DNA of 63,745 bases, filler included, from Hyphochytrium catenoides (Eukaryota > Protista > Hyphochytriomycota), in assembly GCA_900088475.1 (NCBI GenBank). It is 11 parts of 11 records of this genome, joined end to end, with 100 filler letters (N's around TTAATTAATTAA, not from the genome) between each part and the next. Parts side by side here need not be neighbours in the genome. Positions count along the whole stretch, not along the records: positions 57,722 to 61,799 come from FLMG01002989.1; 10 more parts are not named here. One strand, given 5' to 3'. A model generated the notes under the pieces. It saw nothing but the letters and a program-made list of their open reading frames with translations, was not told the origin of the DNA and made no database searches. Of the stretch, positions 10,683 through 61,799 are shown piece after piece (position 1 is the stretch's first letter; the number at the start of each line of letters is the position of its first letter). The position numbers were made by a program, and so were the translations under genes.

Positions 10683-11546
10683 AAGAGGGAGAAATGAGCG
10701 TTATGCATGAAAGCGTCACGAGGCATACCGCTGGGAAGGACGAGATTGACACCAACAGGGGTCGGTTAACAAAGGAGAGAGAAAGGAGAGGGGAGAAAAA
10801 TGAGAAGAGAAAAGGTAGAAGAAGGGGAGAGAAGAGAAAGAGAATCAAACCGGGAGGTGGTTCTAGAAGGGAGAGAGAGAAGCCAGCAATGAAGTGAGAG
10901 AGCACGGCAGATAGGGGAGAGAGAGAGAACGAAGCTTGAAGATCAAAGAGAGAGCATAGCACTGGGGCGAGAATACAAGGTGATGCTCTTCTCTTCCTTT
11001 CCACTCTGACTTTCTCTTACAGATTGTGGTTGAAGAGAAGCTGCTAGATCTCACGCTGCTGGAGCTGAATGAAGGAACATTTTCAGTGACGGTAGGAACC
11101 GACAAGGGAGAAAGCTGGAGGAGACAGGGAGAGGGCAAGAACGAGGTGGACGACGGGAGAAGAAAGAGGGAGAGAGAGAAGACAGGGAGAGGGAGAGAGA
11201 TGAAGACAGAGACAAAGAGAGAGAATATGAGAGAGAGAACATAAGAGAGAGAGAGTGAGAGAGACCGCATGGGAGAGGGAGAGAGAGAACAAATGAGAGA
11301 GCGAGAGACATGGGAAAGAGAAAGAATAGACGCTGTTTACCCTCTTCGTCTCATCAACATTGATTTTCGACTCTCTCCCCCTCCCTTTCTCTCTCTTCCT
11401 CTGCCATAACACCTCTGTCACACATGCAGCTAACATTTACCAGGCGGTCTTTGGTCATCCGATCCAAGAAAGCTCAAAGGATCTACTGCACGCTGCTCAA
11501 TGCCAAACACTCAGCCAGAGGAAGAAAGGCCAGTGTAAGCAGCTAA
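5655..11546 (+). CDS. Large multi-exon hypothetical protein (coiled-coil, Ser-rich middle, C-terminal PH-like domain)
   Basis: About ten phase-compatible GT-AG exons: MEVISRCLDQ...; KLTRDCTALELSFFGK; ELAYLRALDRAEDLL; ANLRGLLEKFVKLAG; 7634-~8657; ADGVRLFLELDQ; GHATEKTEEL; ELLARFLQSKHDQLIFLDY; IVVEEKLLDL; LTFTRRSLVIRSKKAQRIYCTLLNA...* (TAA 11544-11546). The start codon is tentative. Confidence 0.65.
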
Positions 11547-12051
11547 CGAGAAGGGAAGAAAGACTGACACAGAGAGAGAAGGATAAGACCCAAAGACAAA
11601 GAGACTGAAAAGAGAGAGACAGATAGGACAGAGAGCTTTGAAACAATGGCTTAGCACTGCCCTGGCATCAGGCAGGCGTTTATTTATTCGACTCTCTTCA
11701 CTGGAAGAGAAGCATCAGCACATAGACCGCACAAGGGACAGACAGTCCTAACTCCTGACATAAAAAAAGACGGCCCTAGCTTTTATTGCCTATTTCTCTC
11801 ACTCACTATTTCTCTCTCTCCCCCTCTCTCTCTCTCTCTCTCTTGCGCTCTCTCTCTCTCTCTCTGTCTATCCTCCAGCCCATCCCACCTCTCTTCTCTC
11901 CTCCCCTCTTACCAGGCTCTTCTTTCCTCCTACTATGAATAATACTCTCACGACCTTTGTAAATAAGAGAGAGAGAGAGAGAGCTCCCGACTATATAGAC
12001 GCGAGACGGCCTTCCTATTCTCTTCTGCTTGCCTCAGACCGCGACAACGGC

Positions 12052-13552
12052 TCATGTGGACGAATTTGACGACGAAGCAAGCGACGCAGTCTCTTCTTCG
12101 AGAGTCTCTGGGAGTCCGCGCGTGACGTAGTGAATGACCACGCCTTGTAGCAAGAAGATGATCAGGATAGTCCCCAGGATCCACCAGCCTTGACCAGGTT
12201 CAGGATCTCTTCTTATTTCAGGGCGAGGAGGAGGAGGAACGGATGGCTTGTTATCTTTATCCTCCTCTGCTGAGTCTACAGACGTAGTGACAGCTGAAGC
12301 CGTAGAAGCAGCAGTCTCCCTTTCACCCTTTCTCCTCCGTAAGCCAGTGCCTCCGATGTCCTCCTCTTCAGTTTCTTTCTTCTTCCCTTCGGCTTGAGAA
12401 GCTCCAAGAATCTTGCCCCACATCTGCTTCTCTTTGTCGGCAATGTACTTCTTTCTCTCTCTCAGTCTCTGCTGCTCCTGAAGGACATCTTTGTTTCCTG
12501 GATCAACCGTTAGAGCCTTCTCCAAAGCCGCAGAAGCCTCTGGAAAGTCGTCCATCAGTCTGGAACATTTTGCAGCCCGAAGAAGCGCTTTCACGTTGTT
12601 TAGGTCAACTTCTAAGACGGAGATGCATGCTTCTCTCGCGTCTTTGTATCTCTCTTGCTTCATATACGCGGCCGCAAGGTTGTTCGCTAAGTCAATGAGA
12701 ATTTCCTTTCTCTCTGTCTTCTGCTCTTCCTCAACCGCCTCCTCCTCATCCCAGTTTTTCAGTACATCTAACCCAGCCTTATAGTGCGTGACAGCGCGAG
12801 AGAAGTCATTTCTCCCAAACCATTCATTGCCTATCTTCTTCTTGTCTCTCGCGAGACGAAGACTTTCTCCCATCGTCATCTCTGCAGGCGTCTTGCCTTC
12901 CTCTCCTAGGCTGACCAGCTCCACGGTGAACTTCAGCGGCGCGTTCTGAGGAATCCCTCGCTCGGGATCGCCAGTCTCTCCATAGGCGAAGCGGGCGTCA
13001 GTGTTGACCTCTACCACCTCTCCCACTTTCATTAGGCGGACTGCTAGCTCAAGTGCTATGAGAAAGAAGATAGAGAAAGAAAGACCATCAAAAGCCGTAC
13101 GTAGGGATTGAAAACAGAGAGAGAGAGAGAGGGGGAGAGAGAAAGAGAGAGAGAGAGAAAGAGGAGAGAGAACGTGCAGCAAGTGAGGGAGAAAGAAACC
13201 AATAAGGAACGGCAAAGGAAGTAGACATAAGTTCGAGTTAGATGGTGACACATTTCTGAGGAAAACTTGACTTCAGGAGGCAAAATTATGCTAGGGAAAG
13301 AGGTCGCAAAGAGAGAGACAGAGAGACAGAGAGAGAGAGAGAGTTTGTCTGGCTGAAAGTGTGATGTTTGTCTCCTTCCTCTCACCTGGAATCACATCTC
13401 CCATCCCTACTCTAAAGCGCTTCTCTTCTCCGGCAGCAAAGCTCTCTCCTGAGTTGAGCAGCATTCCATTGTAACGCACTAGAACCTCCTGGCCAAACTC
13501 AGGGCTTGCAGCACCTTCAGGAGGCTCTCGGATAGTCTATGTTAGAGAAGAA

Positions 13553-13598
<46 letters not shown>

Positions 13599-13815
13599 GT
13601 GTGAGAGAAAATGGGGAGAACAGAGAGAAAGAGTGAGAGAGAGAGAGACTGAGAGAGAGACTGAGGGGAGGAGGTCAAGAAAGAGAGAGAGAGAAAGAAA
13701 AAGAGCCAAACCCTAGGTCAAGCACAGGCCGCAAGATCACCTTCTTGGCCACGGCTCCAGTGCCCAACAGATCCTCAAATCCATCTTCGAGGATTTCCAG
13801 CTTTTCTTCTGCCAT
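12052..13815 (-). CDS. Tail-anchored FKBP-type PPIase with TPR repeats (FKBP38/FKBP42-like), 3 exons
   Basis: Exons 13815-13741, ~13536-13386, ~13056-12052. FKBP motifs VRYNG, GDVIPALELAVRLMKVGE, AYG, IPQNAPLKFTVEL. TPRs KKIGNEWF, NNLAAAYMK, NVKALLRAA. C-terminal TM WWILGTILIIFLLQGVVIHYV. Confidence 0.9.
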
Positions 13816-14222
13816 TTTGCCTCGGTCTTTGTCCCTTCTAAGTCGAAGCTAGAGCTCACCTATGACGCTCCGAAGGAGGAGAGACGCAGTCCCGTCAGCG
13901 AGACGAAGTCACTACAGAGGAGGGAACCGTCTGAGGCAGCGACTGAGAGATTGCGATGACAGAGAATGTTTCGCAAGGTAAGGTCGGGCTAGCTGGGAGC
14001 TCGTCGAACGAGAGATAAAGAGAGAGATGTCTTTAGGACGCTGAGATCGCGCTGATTAGAGTGCTGGCCCTCGATCCCGACATCGATCGATAGCCTGCTT
14101 GCGAAGGAGCGACGCGGCAAGAGGCAGAGCCTAGATTATAAGAGCAGGAAAACTGGGAACTGGAAGGGCACCAGTCTGATGATGATGTGAGCCTTGAGCG
14201 TGGCTAAGAAGAATGATTGTGG

Positions 14223-14227
<5 letters not shown>

Positions 14228-14266
<39 letters not shown>

Positions 14267-14298
14267 GGGGGAGAGAGAGAGAGAAAGAGAGAGAGAGA

Positions 14299-14341
<43 letters not shown>

Positions 14342-14506
14342 AAGAGGGAGAGAGAAAGAGAGAGAGAGAGAAAGAGAGAGAAAGAGAGAGAGATTGAGAG
14401 AGAGAGAAAGAGAGAGAGATTGAGAGAGAGAGAAAGAGAAAGAGAGATTGAGGAGAGAGAGAGAGAGAAAGAGAGATTGAGAGAGAGAGAAAGAGAGAGA
14501 GAGATT

Positions 14507-14532
<26 letters not shown>
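14228..14532. repeat. ~300-bp nearly pure (GA)n tract with GAGATTGAGA/GAAAGA subrepeats
   Basis: Read directly from the sequence. Confidence 0.95.
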
Positions 14533-14537
<5 letters not shown>

Positions 14538-15028
14538 GCTCGACTGTGAAGCTCCAGTGTGGATCAGAATCCTCATCAGCTACTTGCCAAAACTCTGCTT
14601 GATAATCAATAATTTGATAAAGCCGAAGTAGTCTCATTACTGATCTCGCCTGAATTGATTAATCCTGACTGGAAGAAAGATCAAAACCACCTTTTCTGAG
14701 GGTTACTGTCAGTCCAATCATAATGATTACTAACCAGCTCCAGTTTTGTTCGTTTTTGCTCCTTTACTAACTGAGACTTTCCACAAAGGTTTGTCAGAAG
14801 TCCAAATACCGCTTTCTTTTCTGGACAGATTCTTGCTCCCTTTGATGCTACAGGTTAACTGCCCACACTGGAGGTACAGTTCGGCCAGCAAGAAGATAAA
14901 CAACATATTCGGAATCAAATTGTATTATAAGAAATAAAGCTATTGATATCTATAATCCCATCCCACAGCACATCTTAGGCTCGATTCTGAAAGCCCAGGC
15001 GTCCCTTTTATAGGGGTTTACTATAGCT

Positions 15029-15128
15029 NNNNNNNNNNNNNNNNNNNNNNNNNNNNNNNNNNNNNNNNNNNNTTAATTAATTAANNNNNNNNNNNNNNNN
15101 NNNNNNNNNNNNNNNNNNNNNNNNNNNN
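15029..15128. other. Artificial scaffold linker N44-TTAATTAATTAA-N44 (first of ten)
   Basis: Identical 100-nt spacer with six-frame stops. Other copies: 16255-16354, 26004-26103, 30840-30939, 38286-38385, 39437-39536, 41693-41792, 54277-54376, 57622-57721, 61800-61899. Confidence 0.97.
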
Positions 15129-15412
15129 AGCGAAGACTTAGCTAAACCCATTGACTCACTCTTCTTACATACTACAGTTGTCCACGTATGGGACACGAAG
15201 GGGGGAGAGGGGGGCCTCAGAATGACATAACAAGACTAGCGAAGAAGAGAGAGAGAGGGAGGCCTCGGAGAGTTAGGAAAAGGAGTATTACAGGCTGATC
15301 TGGTCTAGAGTTTGTACTTTCCTTCCACCTGTGATAGTTTTGTCAATACTTTATAACTAATCAAGCGGAAACCTTNNNNNNNNNNNNNNNNNNNNNNNNN
15401 NNNNNNNNNNNN

Positions 15413-16254
15413 GTATGCTCTATCGATTCACGAAGGCACTTCGTTCTGTTTTGGCTCCTTCCAGGTGATCTCGAAAGTTTCATTTCTTGAATCTTTCAAA
15501 GCTTTCATCCTGAGAGGTTGGAATTATGAACTTTGGCAAAGTGCCCTCGTCAATCTTTCCCCCAATGAGATTTGCCACTATGCCGAGTTTCATTTCCTTA
15601 GCTGCATTTTTGGGAAAGATAGAGGTGATAAGGTCTGAATATTTCACATCTGTCATTTATTACTGTAGAGTGTTTCTAGGCATTTTGAATTGGAGCAGCA
15701 AATAGCAAATAGCAATATATTACGAATCAGTCGAATCCTCACTTGATTGTAAATGGGGACAAGCTACATCCAAGATATTAGAGAGTTGTTCTTATGGTCT
15801 GTGTGTATTGGAGCGTTCGACATAACGAAGGGTCCGTGCTGTGGACGGAATATACAGCTTTTACACCAGATCAGCCGGTAACCCTACAAGGACGAATCGC
15901 CGAAACAAATGAAAGGGGAAAAGAAAGAAAGATTAGTGCTATGCCAAATTGACAGATTGTAAAGTGTATTAACACCAAATACCTTTCCAAGGGGTTCGGG
16001 TTCCAGATTCTTACAACAGGTCTCCTGTCTGTCGTTCACTACTGGCCCTCCTCAGAGCGAGTGTGTCATTGATTTGACCACTGCTCTGGATCCCTCCTAT
16101 ACGGTCGTCCGCTGGCAAAGAGAAGCCTACGAGAGATCGTTCATTACAAGGACAAAATAGCAAGCAGCTAATAGATCCCGGCGGGACCCGTGCCATAAAG
16201 AGGGATGACAGGAGCGAGGAGCCAAGTGTTACGAGTACCCAGAGAATTGTAGGA
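15413..16254 (-). mobile_element. Possible 5' part of an LTR retrotransposon (LTR end, PBS, disrupted gag-like ORF)
   Basis: The minus strand reads ...TAACA-ct-TGGCTCCTCG (LTR-like end at 16227, then a tRNA-Asp-like PBS). A disrupted ORF MTDVKYSDLI...LPKFIIPTSQDESFERF starts at ~15657. Confidence 0.3.
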
Positions 16255-57806: not shown

Positions 57807-60800
57807 TTAGAAGTCCCACCATAAGGCAGAGCATAATTGATACTCCGCCAAGTCCTCCGTAGAAAGCGTCCTCAAGTCCCTGGCGCTTATCCCATACGCC
57901 TCCGTCTCGGTCGCCTTTGAGTGGCCTGCTTGATTTGCGAACGGGAGCCGCCTCAACTTGGGAACCCTTGGATAGATATGGGCCTTGAGAAGTGCCGCAG
58001 TAAGGTGGCGGTAGTCGGCTAATCCCAGAGCAGTTTTAGACGAAATCTCGAACTCCCGTTTGAAGACTGCAGCTACATTCTCAGGGGAATCTAACGCTTG
58101 GCCATTGAGAAGCAGGTACGTATAATACTGCTTAGTGACGTTGGCTCTATGCTTAGGCCACAGAATGCCCGCAAAGACCACCTCCGCAGGTCGTACCAGA
58201 GCTAAATATGTTACAACCAATTTCGCGAGTCGTGGAGGAACAAACCGTGCGATCGAAATATCTTTAAATGTCATGGAGCTAACCTTGCTATGCTCCAACA
58301 GCATCAGCATCTGCCGGCCATCTAGGAGATAGAGTCCTCTGTGTCCTCCTACCAAATTCTCTGAGACACGAAGCGTTGCCAACTCTGAAGCTCTTGCTGG
58401 TTGGCCCGATAAAATGTGCAAGAGCGCAATCAAAACATCTCGAAAGCGCCGGGCACCAGCCATATACACCTTCACTTTCTCCACATTCCACAGTATTGAA
58501 TCCACTCGACCTTCACTCGTGAGAGCACCACCACCTGGTGGAACTTGTAGGAGAAATTCCTGCTGGAACTTTGAACGGGTTAGCAATCCTTTGCGAAGGC
58601 CTGTCTTGTTTGGATCAGTCAGGAAGGAGTACCCATTTTTTCGACATCGAAGATCATCTCGCCACGGTGAGCTAAGGTCAGATTTGGGATCCAGTTCAGA
58701 CAGCGGGATGCCTCTCAACATCTCTTTTTCAAGCATTGTTGCTGCCTTGCTCCACAAGTTCTGTACGGCAGACCGAAGTTGAGCAATCGAGATACTCTTT
58801 CCATTGACAGAGAGACTCAGCAACCTGTCTGCCTCACACCATACCACCTGTGGTAGCTTATGCTGTCGATTACAGAGCACGGATGCCAGTAACATGACAT
58901 TCCGGAGTGCCTGGAATGGGGTGTTGAGACCGTCCTTGGCCCATCGTAGAATATCACTGTACGGTGGTTTAAAGTTCTCACGAGGACCACTTGGAGGACC
59001 ACTTCTCCGATCAACGCCGCCACTGCGGCTGTTCTCAGACGCGCTACGTGCATGGGACGACGAGGACTGCGAAGGAGCTGAGGGTCCTTCTTGATCGTTA
59101 CCTGGGGTGGAGGAGGATGTCTGCGTGGAGGTTGCATGGGCCGTTGTCAACTCAAATATGACTGAGCTACGAATGACGTAGAGAAGAGCCGCACACTTCT
59201 CAGTGATATCAGCAACCTTGCCGTATTTCAAACTGCTGTCCATATTGGAGTACATTATATACTGGATCATCGTGAACTGGTTCACTCGTTTGAGCGTCGC
59301 CATATTGGCCTCTACAAAAAAGAGCGACCGACACACTTCGTGGAAACTTAAAAGGAGTGGTCCCTCAAATGCATCATGTTGGCCTCGATTGGAGTTGCGC
59401 TGCCTTTCATTCTCCGCGCTGTACGACGGAAGATCAGCCAAGAACATTGCGCACGCATCGCCAACGTGATCCCCCAGTTCCATTCCTTTTACGATAGTCT
59501 GGTCTCTAAGGCATCTCAACGCAAAAGCCACCACTCGGGCCAAGTGACGGGAATAGCGCTGCAGCGTGGACGGTTGCACCCCCTTGAAAAAAATCGGACT
59601 GTGCAGCGTCAAGCTTGGATTGGCGGCGTGCTGACGCATGAGAAGAGGAATGTCGGGTATCGTCTTTTGTACTGCCTCCATATACCTCAAGCTGATGAGC
59701 TCAATACTTGCATATCGTCCCTGCTCCTCTTCGGCACTGGGCAAACGGCAAGCTTCAACAAGCGGCCCAAGTTCTACTCCTTTCAAGTTCTTCAGCCACC
59801 CAAGCGTACTCAATAGGTTCGACATGAGACGAGTATCCTCGGTCTCCACTTCGTGCGGACCCGCGGACTCCATCTTCTCCAAAATGATTAACCACTGACT
59901 CACTAAAGGGTTGGCACCATCTTCAGAAACGTCACTATTCGGTGCCATGGATGGGAGGTGATGAGGCTCGCAATTGCAGACAACGCGGAAGTATGTTGCG
60001 CGTCGACCCGACGTCCCTAGTTGCTGGATTCTAGATGCAAAGTAGAGTCCAGCTCTTTGGGTTTCGTAGCCGTCGGACTCTTCAGCAACCGCTGCATGGT
60101 TGACAAAGCGCGGCAGGAGTACGCGGTCTCCAGAGGACATAGGCCGCACGTAAAGCCTTCATACACGGGCAAGCCCGTTAGGCATTTATGCAGGCCCATA
60201 TTCTCATCATTGTCAGCATCGTCGGCAATACGAGTCCTTGCAAGGGTCTTGGCAACAAATCCACCCACGGTGCTTTGAGGAAGGAGATCATCGTGCCATT
60301 GAGATTCCGTGGTAGCACCACTATCATCTAAGCATCGACCCAAGCCATCGTCGTCGTCGTCTCTCACTTGAAACCGAGACTGTTCTGCGATTACGTTAAT
60401 CTTGATCCCATGCTTCTTGAGCAAATGGGTACGATAAGCATTGCGATCGAAGAGCGCGACTCCACAAGAGGTGCAACACATTGCAATTAAGCGGGGATTG
60501 AAGATGATGACGAGGTTGTCCACAACAATCGTCCGTGGATGTTCTCCCATGCTCATTGTCCCACGTTCGCTAGCATCAGCTGTCGTTCCCTCCACATTGA
60601 GTTGCACGTTGTTTTCTCCTTGCGTTGTAGTGCTTCCGGCCGTCGCGCCAACTGTAGCATCGGAAGTAGCAGCAATAGAACCATCGGCGTGCCCCGCCCA
60701 CGAGCATATTGCAGCTCTTCATTTCCCTCAGCAGAACTAAGAGTGTGGGTAAGGCAATTCTTCGCATGCCGTTGGAGGCTGCTGCCCATGGAATAAGCAG

Positions 60801-61248
60801 CAGGGCAGCGAAGGCACTGGAATAACCCCGTAAATGAGTCTCGTGCTAATAAGGTACCTTTGTTGTGGTCATCATTCCCTCCTGCTGCTACCCCTGCCAT
60901 ACTACGAGGGTACTTGACATAGGTGGTTGGCTGATGCACATGCTTATGATGTGTCTTCTTTGCAGCCCTCGATAAAAATGTGGCCGAACAGTATCCGCAC
61001 TGGTAGGGCCTACCAATATCATCGCCATCATGATCACCAGCCAACGTTGTCCCACTCCCACCGTTAGATACGGTGTTTGTGGACATGATTATTGGGGGAG
61101 TGGTAGCAGCAGCGCTCGTAATGCCGCGGGCAGCAGGAAGCTCAACATTCGTAACAGCTGTAGGGGCAGCAGACGGAAGTTGAAACCTTGACGGTGCAGA
61201 CGTGACAATCGAAGGGCCAGTGAGAGGAGTTCGCAGTGGTTGGTCCAT
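57807..61248 (-). pseudogene. C2H2 zinc finger + DUF3505/OrsD-like + tyrosine-recombinase-like protein, split by two frameshifts
   Basis: Three overlapping collinear ORFs (61248-60553, 60607-60017, 60149-57807). Fingers CGYC..H...H and CLRC..H...C. DUF3505-like motifs CTSCGVAL..THLLKKH, GLPVYEGFTC and Q....YFRV. Then GQPARASEL, HSK, IARFVP..YLALVRP, DYRH, QAGH, AYG. Confidence 0.75.
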
Positions 61249-61416
61249 GCTTCCTTCAGATGGACTGGTGAAGGTTGGATTACCAAATGATGAAACACAG
61301 GATATGCCTCTTACAGCCTAAGAAGAGCAATAATAATTAACTCGCGTCGAACCCGATCCTATCCTTTCAATTTGGAGAATGGCTCCTACGATCGGTTACT
61401 TGTGAGAGGGAGTGTG

Positions 61417-61560
61417 CAGCCAGCTACAGCCGGATGCAGTACAGCAAAGGGAGGAGGCAGCCTACACCATAAAGCAGTCTCGCGGGAACAGGCAACCCAC
61501 TGACTGCAGCTTCCTCACTTCCCATTGATTATGTATGTCTGTGTGTGTGTGTGTGTGTTG

Positions 61561-61623
<63 letters not shown>

Positions 61624-61799
61624 ACAGCCAGCTATAGTCAGATGCGGTACAGTGGTACACCATAGGACGCAGTCATCATGTACTATCATGCCTCGCGGAA
61701 GAAGGGTTGTAAGACAGACAGACTTCCGGTAGGCTACCCATCGAGAAACAGAGAGACAGAGCGAGAGAGTACACAGCCAGCTACAGCCCAGATGCGGTA
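61417..61799. repeat. Three copies of a ~28-bp motif CAGCCAGCTAYAGYCRGATGCRGTACAG
   Basis: Copies at 61417, 61625 and 61774 (the last is cut by the linker). Confidence 0.85.

What the first reader, a model, noticed from the sequence alone, without database searches (positions are those of the whole stretch)
57807..61248. Zinc-finger/DUF3505-like protein with an ordered tyrosine-recombinase-like active site: candidate mobile element in an apparently non-fungal host
Seen: one ~1,100-aa intronless reading path with several Zn-finger motifs, then HILSGQPARASEL (R, ~58390), HSK (K, ~58285), LADYRH (HxxR position, ~58010), NQAGH (H, ~57925) and AYG (Y, ~57895). These follow the order and spacing of the tyrosine-recombinase R-K-HxxR-H-Y set. 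Established: DUF3505/OrsD-like regions precede RecQ domains in fungal telomere-linked helicases; eukaryotic tyrosine-recombinase elements include Cryptons, DIRS and Starships (DUF3435). Inference: this is the integrase of a DNA element distinct from those classes, possibly with a helicase beyond the scaffold end, in a protist/alga-like genome.
Basis: partly seen in the sequence, partly recalled or inferred. Interest (0 to 1): 0.85.

Follow-up and report, generated by a model that had tools for sequence, protein, structure and literature searches.

The report
Telomere-linked-helicase gene remnant with recombinase-like domain
The piece holds a broken, helicase-less copy of a known gene family, the telomere-linked helicases of fungi and a choanoflagellate, and its unexplained "TLH domain" has the fold and active-site residues of a DNA-cutting-and-rejoining tyrosine recombinase, which gives a testable idea of what these genes do.

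Summary
They are not a chance pattern. In about 160 homologues, R, E(+3), K, R, H and Y are almost invariant: 128 of 130 domains that cover the five sites read R-K-R-H-Y.

An AlphaFold model of the last 232 residues (pLDDT 89) matches mainly tyrosine recombinases in PDB and in a viral structure library (probability 1.0, E about 2e-3, TM 0.45-0.52). A profile comparison puts the family's R, E and K on Cre R173, E176 and K201 (E 4.4e-4; shuffles score at most 20 against 34).

The gene is not a new kind of element. It is collinear with telomere-linked helicase (TLH) proteins: C2H2 fingers, OrsD/DUF3505, middle region, "TLH domain". In relatives a RecQ-like helicase follows.

Here the reading path has two frame breaks, at least one of them a true indel. 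It stops right after the TLH domain, 85 nt from the piece's edge, so no helicase is visible.

No paper in the library searched links the TLH domain to recombinases, and its function is called unknown.

Mobility, the host's identity and catalytic activity are all untested.

The parts
60553..61248 (-). First reading-frame segment (231 codons from an ATG). It is the N-terminal part, with two C2H2-type zinc fingers at 61005-60934 and 60822-60754.
   Evidence: ORF. (zf-C2H2_4, E 4e-4, and weaker finger models). (weak similarity to the N-termini of TLH-type proteins P0073 and P0005).
60643..60718 (-). Frame break A. The coding path must change frame somewhere in this unconserved linker, by a 1-nt loss or a 3n+2 gap. 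A GT..AG stretch of 50 nt (60701-60652) would fit arithmetically, but its splice sites are poor.
   Evidence: frames and stops. (limits of homology on either side).
60017..60607 (-). Second reading-frame segment. It is the OrsD/DUF3505 region, with a C-x2-C-x12-H-x4-H finger at 60475-60410 and the Cys pair of a second finger at 60193-60089.
   Evidence: PF12013, E 1e-7, above Pfam's cut-off. (alignment with the OrsD regions of P0001, P0004-P0007 and P0012).
60030..60091 (-). Frame break B, inside the OrsD domain. Homology to relatives runs on across it with no room for an intron, so it is an indel (a mutation or an assembly error). The His ligands of the second finger are missing in either reading.
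   Evidence: alignment. (frames).
58953..60149 (-). Middle region of the third segment (codons 1-399 of the 780-codon ORF). Its head is the tail of the OrsD domain, and it includes a Ser-rich low-complexity stretch. It is weakly but collinearly similar to the region between OrsD and the TLH domain in relatives.
   Evidence: phmmer hits to P0035, P0069, P0004, P0075 and P0010, E 1e-7 to 2e-5, in collinear positions.
58506..58952 (-). N-terminal subdomain of the conserved 381-residue block. It may correspond to a recombinase DNA-binding domain, but this is not established.
   Evidence: all hits cover query residues ~400-780. (model pLDDT 86.8). (whole-block matches to Cre and lambda Int, but with large rmsd).
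57810..58505 (-). Tyrosine-recombinase-like catalytic domain, which is the published 'TLH domain'. Arg I is at 58394-58392, Glu I at 58385-58383, Lys at 58286-58284, Arg II at 58010-58008, His III at 57923-57921 and Tyr at 57896-57894.
   Evidence: invariance. (model pLDDT 89.3). (Foldseek hits led by recombinases and integrases, prob 1.0). (hhalign to the Cre family).
57807..57809 (-). In-frame stop (TAA) directly after the TLH domain's closing S..W motif, 85 nt from the piece's edge. Relatives continue here with a linker and then a RecQ-like helicase.
61406..61799 (.). Upstream repeat region. A 26-28 nt motif recurs three times (61406-61444, 61625-61652, 61763-61788) with CT/CA microsatellites (61532-61617). 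It may be the edge of a tandem array like those that flank related genes.
   Evidence: For comparison, (satellite arrays next to TLH genes in L003 and L004).

Best explanation
[quoted passage not shown] Its order is two C2H2 fingers, an OrsD/DUF3505 finger domain, a poorly conserved middle region and the 'TLH domain'.

This copy is damaged or mis-assembled. It has two frame breaks, lost zinc ligands, and a stop where relatives run on into a RecQ-like helicase.

The TLH domain is a divergent member of the tyrosine recombinase / type IB topoisomerase fold. It has six of the seven canonical recombinase active-site positions: Arg I, Glu I, Lys, Arg II, His III and Tyr. Only His II is missing.

Inferred mechanism for intact family members:
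- The fingers place the protein on DNA.
- The Tyr attacks a phosphodiester to form a covalent 3'-phosphotyrosyl intermediate, and the strand is then rejoined.
- The fused helicase supplies unwinding or branch migration.

The most likely biological use is cutting and rejoining DNA during recombination between chromosome ends, which would also explain how these multi-copy subtelomeric gene units spread.

Shown here: family membership, the fold and the residue conservation. Inferred: catalysis, the substrate and the link to spreading.
For: Family:
- phmmer against 1.84 billion representatives gave 1593 hits. All of the 150 listed match query residues ~385-780.
- The top hits have OrsD + this domain + DEAD/Helicase_C.
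- Named members include 'ATP-dependent DNA helicase tlh1' of Cyphellophora, and proteins of Metarhizium, Cladochytrium and Ceratobasidium.
- The literature defines TLH proteins by C2H2 motifs, a ~250-residue TLH domain just upstream of the helicase, and RecQ motifs.
- The window's N-terminal segments are collinear with relatives.

Fold:
- The models have pLDDT 86.8 and 89.3.
- In PDB, ranks 1-32 are all XerA, Cre, XerH, lambda Int or IntI, at prob 0.72-1.00, best E 2e-3, TMq 0.38-0.52.
- Every named hit in the viral library is an integrase, a Tyr-recombinase-domain protein or a DNA_BRE_C-domain protein.

Sequence:
- hhalign of the family against 38 Cre-like recombinases gave E 4.4e-4. It pairs the family's R/E/K with Cre R173/E176/K201.
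- The real score is 34.0, against at most 20.3 in 40 column shuffles and 16.5 reversed.

Residues:
- R-K-R-H-Y is present in 128 of 130 domains, and Glu at +3 from Arg I in 163 of 165.
- R-x-x-E/D and the 9-residue His-Tyr spacing match Cre, lambda Int, Xer and TopIB as tabulated in PMC2943603.
Against: - No HMMER-level match to any recombinase in Pfam or PDB.
- Foldseek E-values never reach 1e-3, and TM-scores sit near 0.5.
- hhalign probability is only 34%. Its confident part stops before Arg II, and the relaxed alignment mis-pairs the family's GHS with Cre's H289 box.
- For that reason, Arg II, His and Tyr are assigned from order, spacing and invariance only.
- The Tyr region had pLDDT about 40 in the longer model.
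- His II is not conserved.
- The window copy itself is broken and shows no helicase, so it may do nothing.
- No activity has ever been shown for a TLH domain.
Confidence: 0.8

Rival explanations
1. One reading: this is the integrase of an autonomous DNA transposon of a new class, a Crypton- or Starship-like cut-and-paste or integrate-and-excise element that inserts at many sites, not only at chromosome ends.
For: - Recombinase-like fold and active site.
- The family is large and patchy, with 1593 representatives at 50% clustering.
- Relatives lie among Tc1/mariner and Ty3 elements or between satellite arrays.
- The copy here is decayed, as old transposon copies are.
Against: - No terminal repeats, target-site duplications or second copies could be examined in a 4-kb piece.
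- Described family members sit next to telomeres rather than dispersed.
- There is no sequence membership in Phage_integrase or DUF3435, with no Pfam hit even at E<=10 in 66 members.
- A 2026 paper on Crypton elements that reviews recombinase-encoding elements never mentions helicases or telomeres.
Confidence: 0.25
2. This is a host telomere-maintenance enzyme rather than a selfish element. The recombinase-like domain would act as a topoisomerase or Holliday-junction-processing partner of the fused RecQ-like helicase, by analogy with RecQ-Top3 pairs and reverse gyrase, during recombination-based telomere repair.
For: - The active site lacks His II, as TopIB does.
- It is fused to a helicase in most full-length relatives.
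- Published accounts link yeast subtelomeric helicases to telomerase-deficient cells (introduction of 10.1101/2024.02.27.582403).
Against: - Glu I, a recombinase-specific residue that TopIB lacks, is invariant.
- PDB recombinases outrank TopIB structures in the fold search.
- The genes are present or absent between strains of one species, which is unusual for a core maintenance factor.
Confidence: 0.3
3. The domain keeps the fold but is catalytically dead, and serves only as a DNA-binding module for the helicase.
For: - Integrase-like folds reused as DNA binders exist. One appears among the hits, the SroF phage repressor 9rgl.
- No activity has been reported for any TLH protein.
Against: Dead relatives normally lose the catalytic residues. 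Here Arg I, Lys, Arg II and Tyr are unchanged in every domain instance that covers them, and His III in all but three, at about 27% overall identity.
Confidence: 0.1
4. The reading-frame breaks and the stop are assembly errors, and the source genome holds an intact full-length TLH gene with the helicase just beyond the piece's edge.
For: - Both breaks need the same one-base correction.
- A 780-codon frame stays open after them.
- One frame is open from the stop to the edge.
Against: - The frame that is open after the stop needs a shift in the opposite direction.
- The His ligands of the second OrsD finger are absent in either frame.
- The 28 residues after the stop show no clear likeness to the relatives' linker.
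Confidence: 0.3

Closest known systems
Telomere-linked helicase (TLH) gene family: Magnaporthe TLH1, Schizosaccharomyces pombe tlh1/tlh2, Ustilago UTASa, Metarhizium TAH1, Monosiga brevicollis TLH
   Same: The order of N-terminal C2H2/OrsD fingers, middle region and TLH domain is the same. The domain matches proteins named tlh1 and Metarhizium TLH-type proteins. Repeats lie next to the gene, as in relatives.
   Different: At most about 35% identical to any of 1.84 billion representatives. No helicase is visible. There are two frame breaks. Telomere linkage and copy number are unknown.
Tyrosine site-specific recombinases (Cre, XerA/XerH, lambda Int; Pfam PF00589)
   Same: The catalytic-domain fold matches. 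Arg I-x-x-Glu, Lys on the beta hairpin, Arg II, and His nine residues before Tyr are all present.
   Different: There is no HMM-level sequence match. His II is not conserved. It is fused to zinc fingers and, in relatives, to a RecQ-like helicase. No recombination sites are known.
Type IB topoisomerases (poxvirus and bacterial TopIB)
   Same: It has the R-K-R-H-Y pentad without His II. Deinococcus TopIB appears among the fold matches.
   Different: TopIB has no Glu I equivalent, and it is invariant here. TopIB structures rank below the recombinases.
Eukaryotic recombinase-encoding elements: Crypton, DIRS/Ngaro, Starship 'Captain' (DUF3435)
   Same: They are eukaryotic, have a recombinase-type active site, and are associated with repeats and other transposons.
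   Different: No Pfam match to DUF3435 or Phage_integrase. The domain partners differ (OrsD fingers, helicase). No terminal structures are defined. It was not compared directly with Crypton sequences.
Hairpin telomere resolvases (protelomerases TelK, ResT)
   Same: They are recombinase-related enzymes that act at chromosome ends (background: abstract of PMC12270096, listed).
   Different: None appeared among the 50 listed fold matches of either PDB search. Eukaryotic telomeres here are not hairpins. This is an analogy only.

Membership tests
Telomere-linked helicase (TLH) family | N-terminal C2H2 zinc-binding motifs | tested here: met
   C2H2 fingers lie at 61005-60934 and 60822-60754, and PF12013 OrsD matches at E 1e-7. 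They align with the relatives' fingers. The second OrsD finger lacks its His ligands.
Telomere-linked helicase (TLH) family | TLH domain (~250 conserved residues just upstream of the helicase) | tested here: met
   ORF residues 400-780 match the region before DEAD/Helicase_C in P0001-P0010. They also match a protein named tlh1.
Telomere-linked helicase (TLH) family | RecQ-like superfamily II helicase domain | tested here: not met
   There is an in-frame stop at 57809-57807 right after the TLH domain, and only 85 nt follow with no helicase motif. A helicase could lie beyond the edge, so absence from the gene is not proven.
Telomere-linked helicase (TLH) family | Multi-copy and adjacent to telomere repeats | not testable with these tools
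   The piece is 4 kb from an unknown genome. It holds no telomere-type tandem repeat.
Tyrosine recombinase superfamily | Catalytic-domain fold (DNA breaking-rejoining enzyme core) | tested here: met
   The model has pLDDT 89.3. PDB ranks 1-32 are all recombinases, at prob 0.72-1.00 and TMq 0.38-0.52. The viral library gives integrases. E-values are only 2e-3 to 1e-2.
Tyrosine recombinase superfamily | [quoted passage not shown] | tested here: met
   Six of the seven are present and nearly invariant. R, E and K are in register with Cre by hhalign. His II is variable (S/N/R/Q/A). That position is only 87% conserved among recombinases and is dispensable in Cre.
Tyrosine recombinase superfamily | The residues cluster in space around the scissile phosphate | not testable with these tools
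   Model coordinates are not exposed to scripts, and Foldseek residue alignments are not shown.
Tyrosine recombinase superfamily | Sequence-profile membership (Pfam PF00589 Phage_integrase) | tested here: not met
   No hit at E<=1 for the window protein. None at E<=10 in the 66 family members. The PDB profile search was empty.
Starship Captain (DUF3435) | Match to Pfam DUF3435 | tested here: not met
   No DUF3435 hit.
Crypton | Crypton-type recombinase sequence and element termini | not tested
   No Crypton sequence was obtained from a tool, and no termini are visible in the piece.

The most novel reading that the evidence does not exclude
The TLH domain may be an active recombinase, and zinc fingers + recombinase + RecQ-like helicase may form the machinery of a so far unrecognised class of self-propagating eukaryotic DNA elements. 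Such elements would colonise chromosome ends and satellite arrays by site-specific strand exchange. They would be found across fungi, in a choanoflagellate and in unidentified eukaryotes in metagenomes. The window would hold a decayed copy from a deep, unsampled lineage.
Probability: 0.3. Interest if true: 0.85.

Novelty: new variant of a known kind. Interest (0 to 1): 0.6.

Why it matters
TLH genes have been catalogued at chromosome ends since 1998. [quoted passage not shown]

A complete recombinase-type active site in front of the helicase turns that open question into simple experiments. These include Tyr-to-Phe alleles, trapping of a covalent DNA adduct, and relaxation and junction assays.

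The same finding offers a mechanism for two observations: how these gene units move between chromosome ends, and why they differ between strains. It would also add a helicase-fused branch to the eukaryotic tyrosine recombinases.

The window itself adds only a divergent, broken copy.

Tried and rejected
- Word-index homology search of residues 400-780 found nothing.
- phmmer and a profile search against PDB sequences found nothing relevant.
- A Pfam scan of the window protein and of all 66 aligned domains at E<=10 gave no recombinase family.
- hhalign of the family against single Cre or lambda Int sequences was not significant, although the Cre alignment already paired the Arg I boxes.
- Relaxing hhalign to extend the Cre-family alignment gave a zero-confidence tail that pairs QAGHS with Cre's H289 box. 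I do not use it.
- An intron as the cause of frame break B is rejected, because homology continues across it with no spare length.
- For break A, a 50-nt GT..AG stretch fits arithmetically but has poor splice signals, so that break is left open.
- Programmed -1 frameshifting: no slippery heptamer in the right frame was seen on reading the sequence. No formal scan was run.
- No telomere repeats occur in the piece.
- A maximum-likelihood tree meant to place the host left the window as a long unplaced branch with no supported sister. The careful tree search did not finish.
- The assembly accession of a relative (GCA_025450795.1) was not found in the paper library.
- Literature searches pairing TLH terms with recombinase terms returned nothing.
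- I did not look up the source contig. No protein above about 35% identity exists in the 15-billion-protein collection, so an exact look-up could not succeed.
Full report
**What is in the piece**

On the minus strand, three ORFs in three different frames follow one another: 61248-60553 (231 codons), 60607-60017 (196 codons) and 60149-57807 (780 codons). Nothing on the plus strand stands out. G+C is an even 48-54%.

- The first ORF has two C2H2-type fingers.
- The second matches Pfam OrsD/DUF3505 (PF12013) at E 1e-7, above the curated cut-off.
- The third has no Pfam match at all.

**The motifs**

| Residue | Motif | Window coordinates |
|---|---|---|
| Arg | GQPARASEL | 58394-58392 |
| Lys | HSK | 58286-58284 |
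| Arg | DYRH | 58010-58008 |
| His | QAGHS | 57923-57921 |
| Tyr | AYG | 57896-57894 |

**Relatives**

A word-index search of this region found nothing. An exhaustive phmmer search of 1.84 billion representative proteins found 1593 proteins at E<=1e-3.

- All of the 150 listed hits match residues about 385-780 of the ORF.
- The best hit reaches only E 2e-42 at 29% identity.
- Many hits are 1500-1800 residues long, with the matched block at about 500-900.

The six long hits that were scanned carry OrsD at the N-terminus and DEAD plus Helicase_C after the block. A second search from the best hit brought in named proteins:

- "ATP-dependent DNA helicase tlh1" of Cyphellophora
- a Metarhizium protein
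- a protein of the chytrid Cladochytrium
- a protein of Ceratobasidium

The window's first two ORFs and the first 400 codons of the third are weakly but collinearly similar to the matching parts of these proteins.

This is the architecture that the literature gives for telomere-linked helicases: two N-terminal C2H2 motifs, a ~250-residue "TLH domain" directly upstream of the helicase, and RecQ motifs. [quoted passage not shown] 2009 and Robertson 2009).

**Is the TLH domain a tyrosine recombinase?**

Four lines of evidence agree.

1. *Residue conservation.* An alignment of 66 domains has 27% mean column identity.
The Lys and the His are at least 90% conserved.
   - Across 170 domain instances, 128 of the 130 that cover all five sites read R-K-R-H-Y. 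The Glu is present in 163 of 165. The proteins named tlh1 and the Metarhizium protein have the full set.
2. *Predicted structure.*
   - AlphaFold models built on these alignments are confident: pLDDT 86.8 for 381 residues and 89.3 for the last 232.
   - With the 232-residue model, the first 32 PDB matches are all XerA, Cre, XerH, lambda integrase or integron integrase. Their probabilities are 0.72-1.00, the best E is 2e-3, and TM-scores are 0.38-0.52 normalised to the query.
   - The whole-block model gives the same families more weakly, and Deinococcus TopIB lower down.
   - In the viral library, every named match is an integrase, a Tyr-recombinase-domain protein or a DNA_BRE_C-domain protein.
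3. *Profile-profile comparison.*
   - The family was compared with 38 natural Cre-like recombinases collected here. The result is E 4.4e-4 over 108 columns.
   - It pairs the family's Arg, Glu and Lys with Cre R173, E176 and K201.
   - The score of 34.0 exceeds all 40 column-shuffled controls (maximum 20.3) and the reversed control (16.5).
4. *Fit to the published active site* (PMC2943603 Table 1).
   - Arg I-x-x-Glu/Asp is found in recombinases and is absent from TopIB. The family has it.
   - The spacing between His III and Tyr is nine residues, as in Cre, lambda Int, Xer and poxvirus TopIB.
   - The one missing position is His II. The residue three before Arg II is S, N, R, Q or A. That position is absent in TopIB, only 87% conserved in recombinases, and largely dispensable in Cre.

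**Limits of that evidence**

- No HMMER-level match to any recombinase exists in Pfam or PDB.
- Foldseek E-values stay above 1e-3.
- hhalign probability is 34%, and its reliable part ends before Arg II. The relaxed extension mis-pairs the His box.
- Arg II, His and Tyr are therefore assigned from order, spacing, secondary-structure context and invariance.

**State of this copy**

- *Break B* lies inside the OrsD domain (60091-60030). Homology to relatives continues straight across it with no spare length, so it is an indel and not an intron. The His ligands of that finger are missing in either frame.
- *Break A* (60718-60643) lies in an unconserved linker and cannot be resolved.
- *The stop.* The third ORF ends at a TAA at 57809-57807, right after the domain's closing S..W motif. 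Relatives continue there with a linker of roughly 75-200 residues and then the helicase. Only 85 nt remain. One other frame is open to the edge, but it needs a shift in the opposite direction and shows no clear likeness to the linkers.

The simplest reading is a decayed or truncated copy. Assembly errors are the alternative.

**Context**

- The piece has no telomere repeat.
- Upstream of the start codon, a 26-28 nt motif recurs three times with CT/CA microsatellites.
- In one metagenomic relative, the gene is bracketed on both sides by arrays of the same 357-bp satellite.
- In another, a 224-bp satellite lies 4 kb downstream.
- In a third, the gene is split and lies among Tc1/mariner and Ty3 elements.

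These settings are repeat-rich, as published for TLH genes, but they define no element ends.

**Host**

A tree of the domain leaves the window sequence as a long branch with no supported sister. It sits in a poorly resolved group that also holds the chytrid sequence and many unlabelled metagenomic ones, apart from the ascomycete tlh1 and basidiomycete clades. This was the quick tree, because the careful search did not finish.

A fungal or a non-fungal origin cannot be decided.

**How it most likely works**

Shown: the family, the fold and the catalytic residues.

Inferred for intact members:
- The fingers bind DNA.
- The Tyr forms a 3'-phosphotyrosyl link and the strand is rejoined.
- The fused helicase drives unwinding or branch migration.
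- Together they would promote exchange between chromosome ends, and with it the spread of the TLH unit.

Rival readings:
- a host topoisomerase-like partner of the helicase in telomere repair
- a dead DNA-binding fold, which is unlikely given the invariance

**Novelty**

None of eight full-text searches found a paper that links TLH genes or the TLH domain with recombinases or TopIB (the pairing searches are). [quoted passage not shown] A 2026 paper on Crypton elements that reviews recombinase-encoding elements never mentions helicases or telomeres.

The library lacks most subscription papers and all protein-database annotations, so prior notice elsewhere cannot be excluded.

I rate the object a new variant of a known kind: a known gene family whose signature domain turns out to be a recombinase-type catalytic domain in an unusual fusion. 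The window's own copy is a divergent, broken member.

Noticed in passing
window 61406-61444, 61625-61652, 61763-61788 and 61532-61617: A 26-28 nt motif recurs three times at 140-210 nt spacing upstream of the gene, each near a CT/CA microsatellite. It looks like the edge of a short tandem array cut by the piece's end.
   Followed up: partly
L004 1-1690 and 7310-9139: A related TLH gene from a metagenome is bracketed on both sides by arrays of the same 357-bp satellite. In L003, a 224-bp satellite array lies at 11428-15623, 4 kb downstream of the gene. Whether such arrays are recombination sites is unknown.
   Followed up: partly
L005 2643-5969: A relative is split into a TLH-domain ORF and a separate Helicase_C ORF. 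It lies among Tc1/mariner (DDE_3) and Ty3-type retroelement genes.
   Followed up: no
P0004 and P0153 (NCBI MGH7974641.1, MGH7955087.1): TLH-type proteins with OrsD and helicase domains are labelled as coming from bacterial or cyanobacterial metagenome-assembled genomes. They are probably eukaryotic contigs binned by mistake.
   Followed up: no
P0159 residues 750-986 and 1733-1982: A 2674-residue Metarhizium protein holds two complete TLH domains. It is probably two tandem TLH genes merged into one gene model.
   Followed up: no
window 58960-59150 (minus strand, ORF codons ~335-397): A Ser/Pro/Gly-rich low-complexity stretch lies just before the conserved block, probably a flexible linker. It caused the only, spurious, PDB sequence hits (antibody chains).
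   Followed up: no
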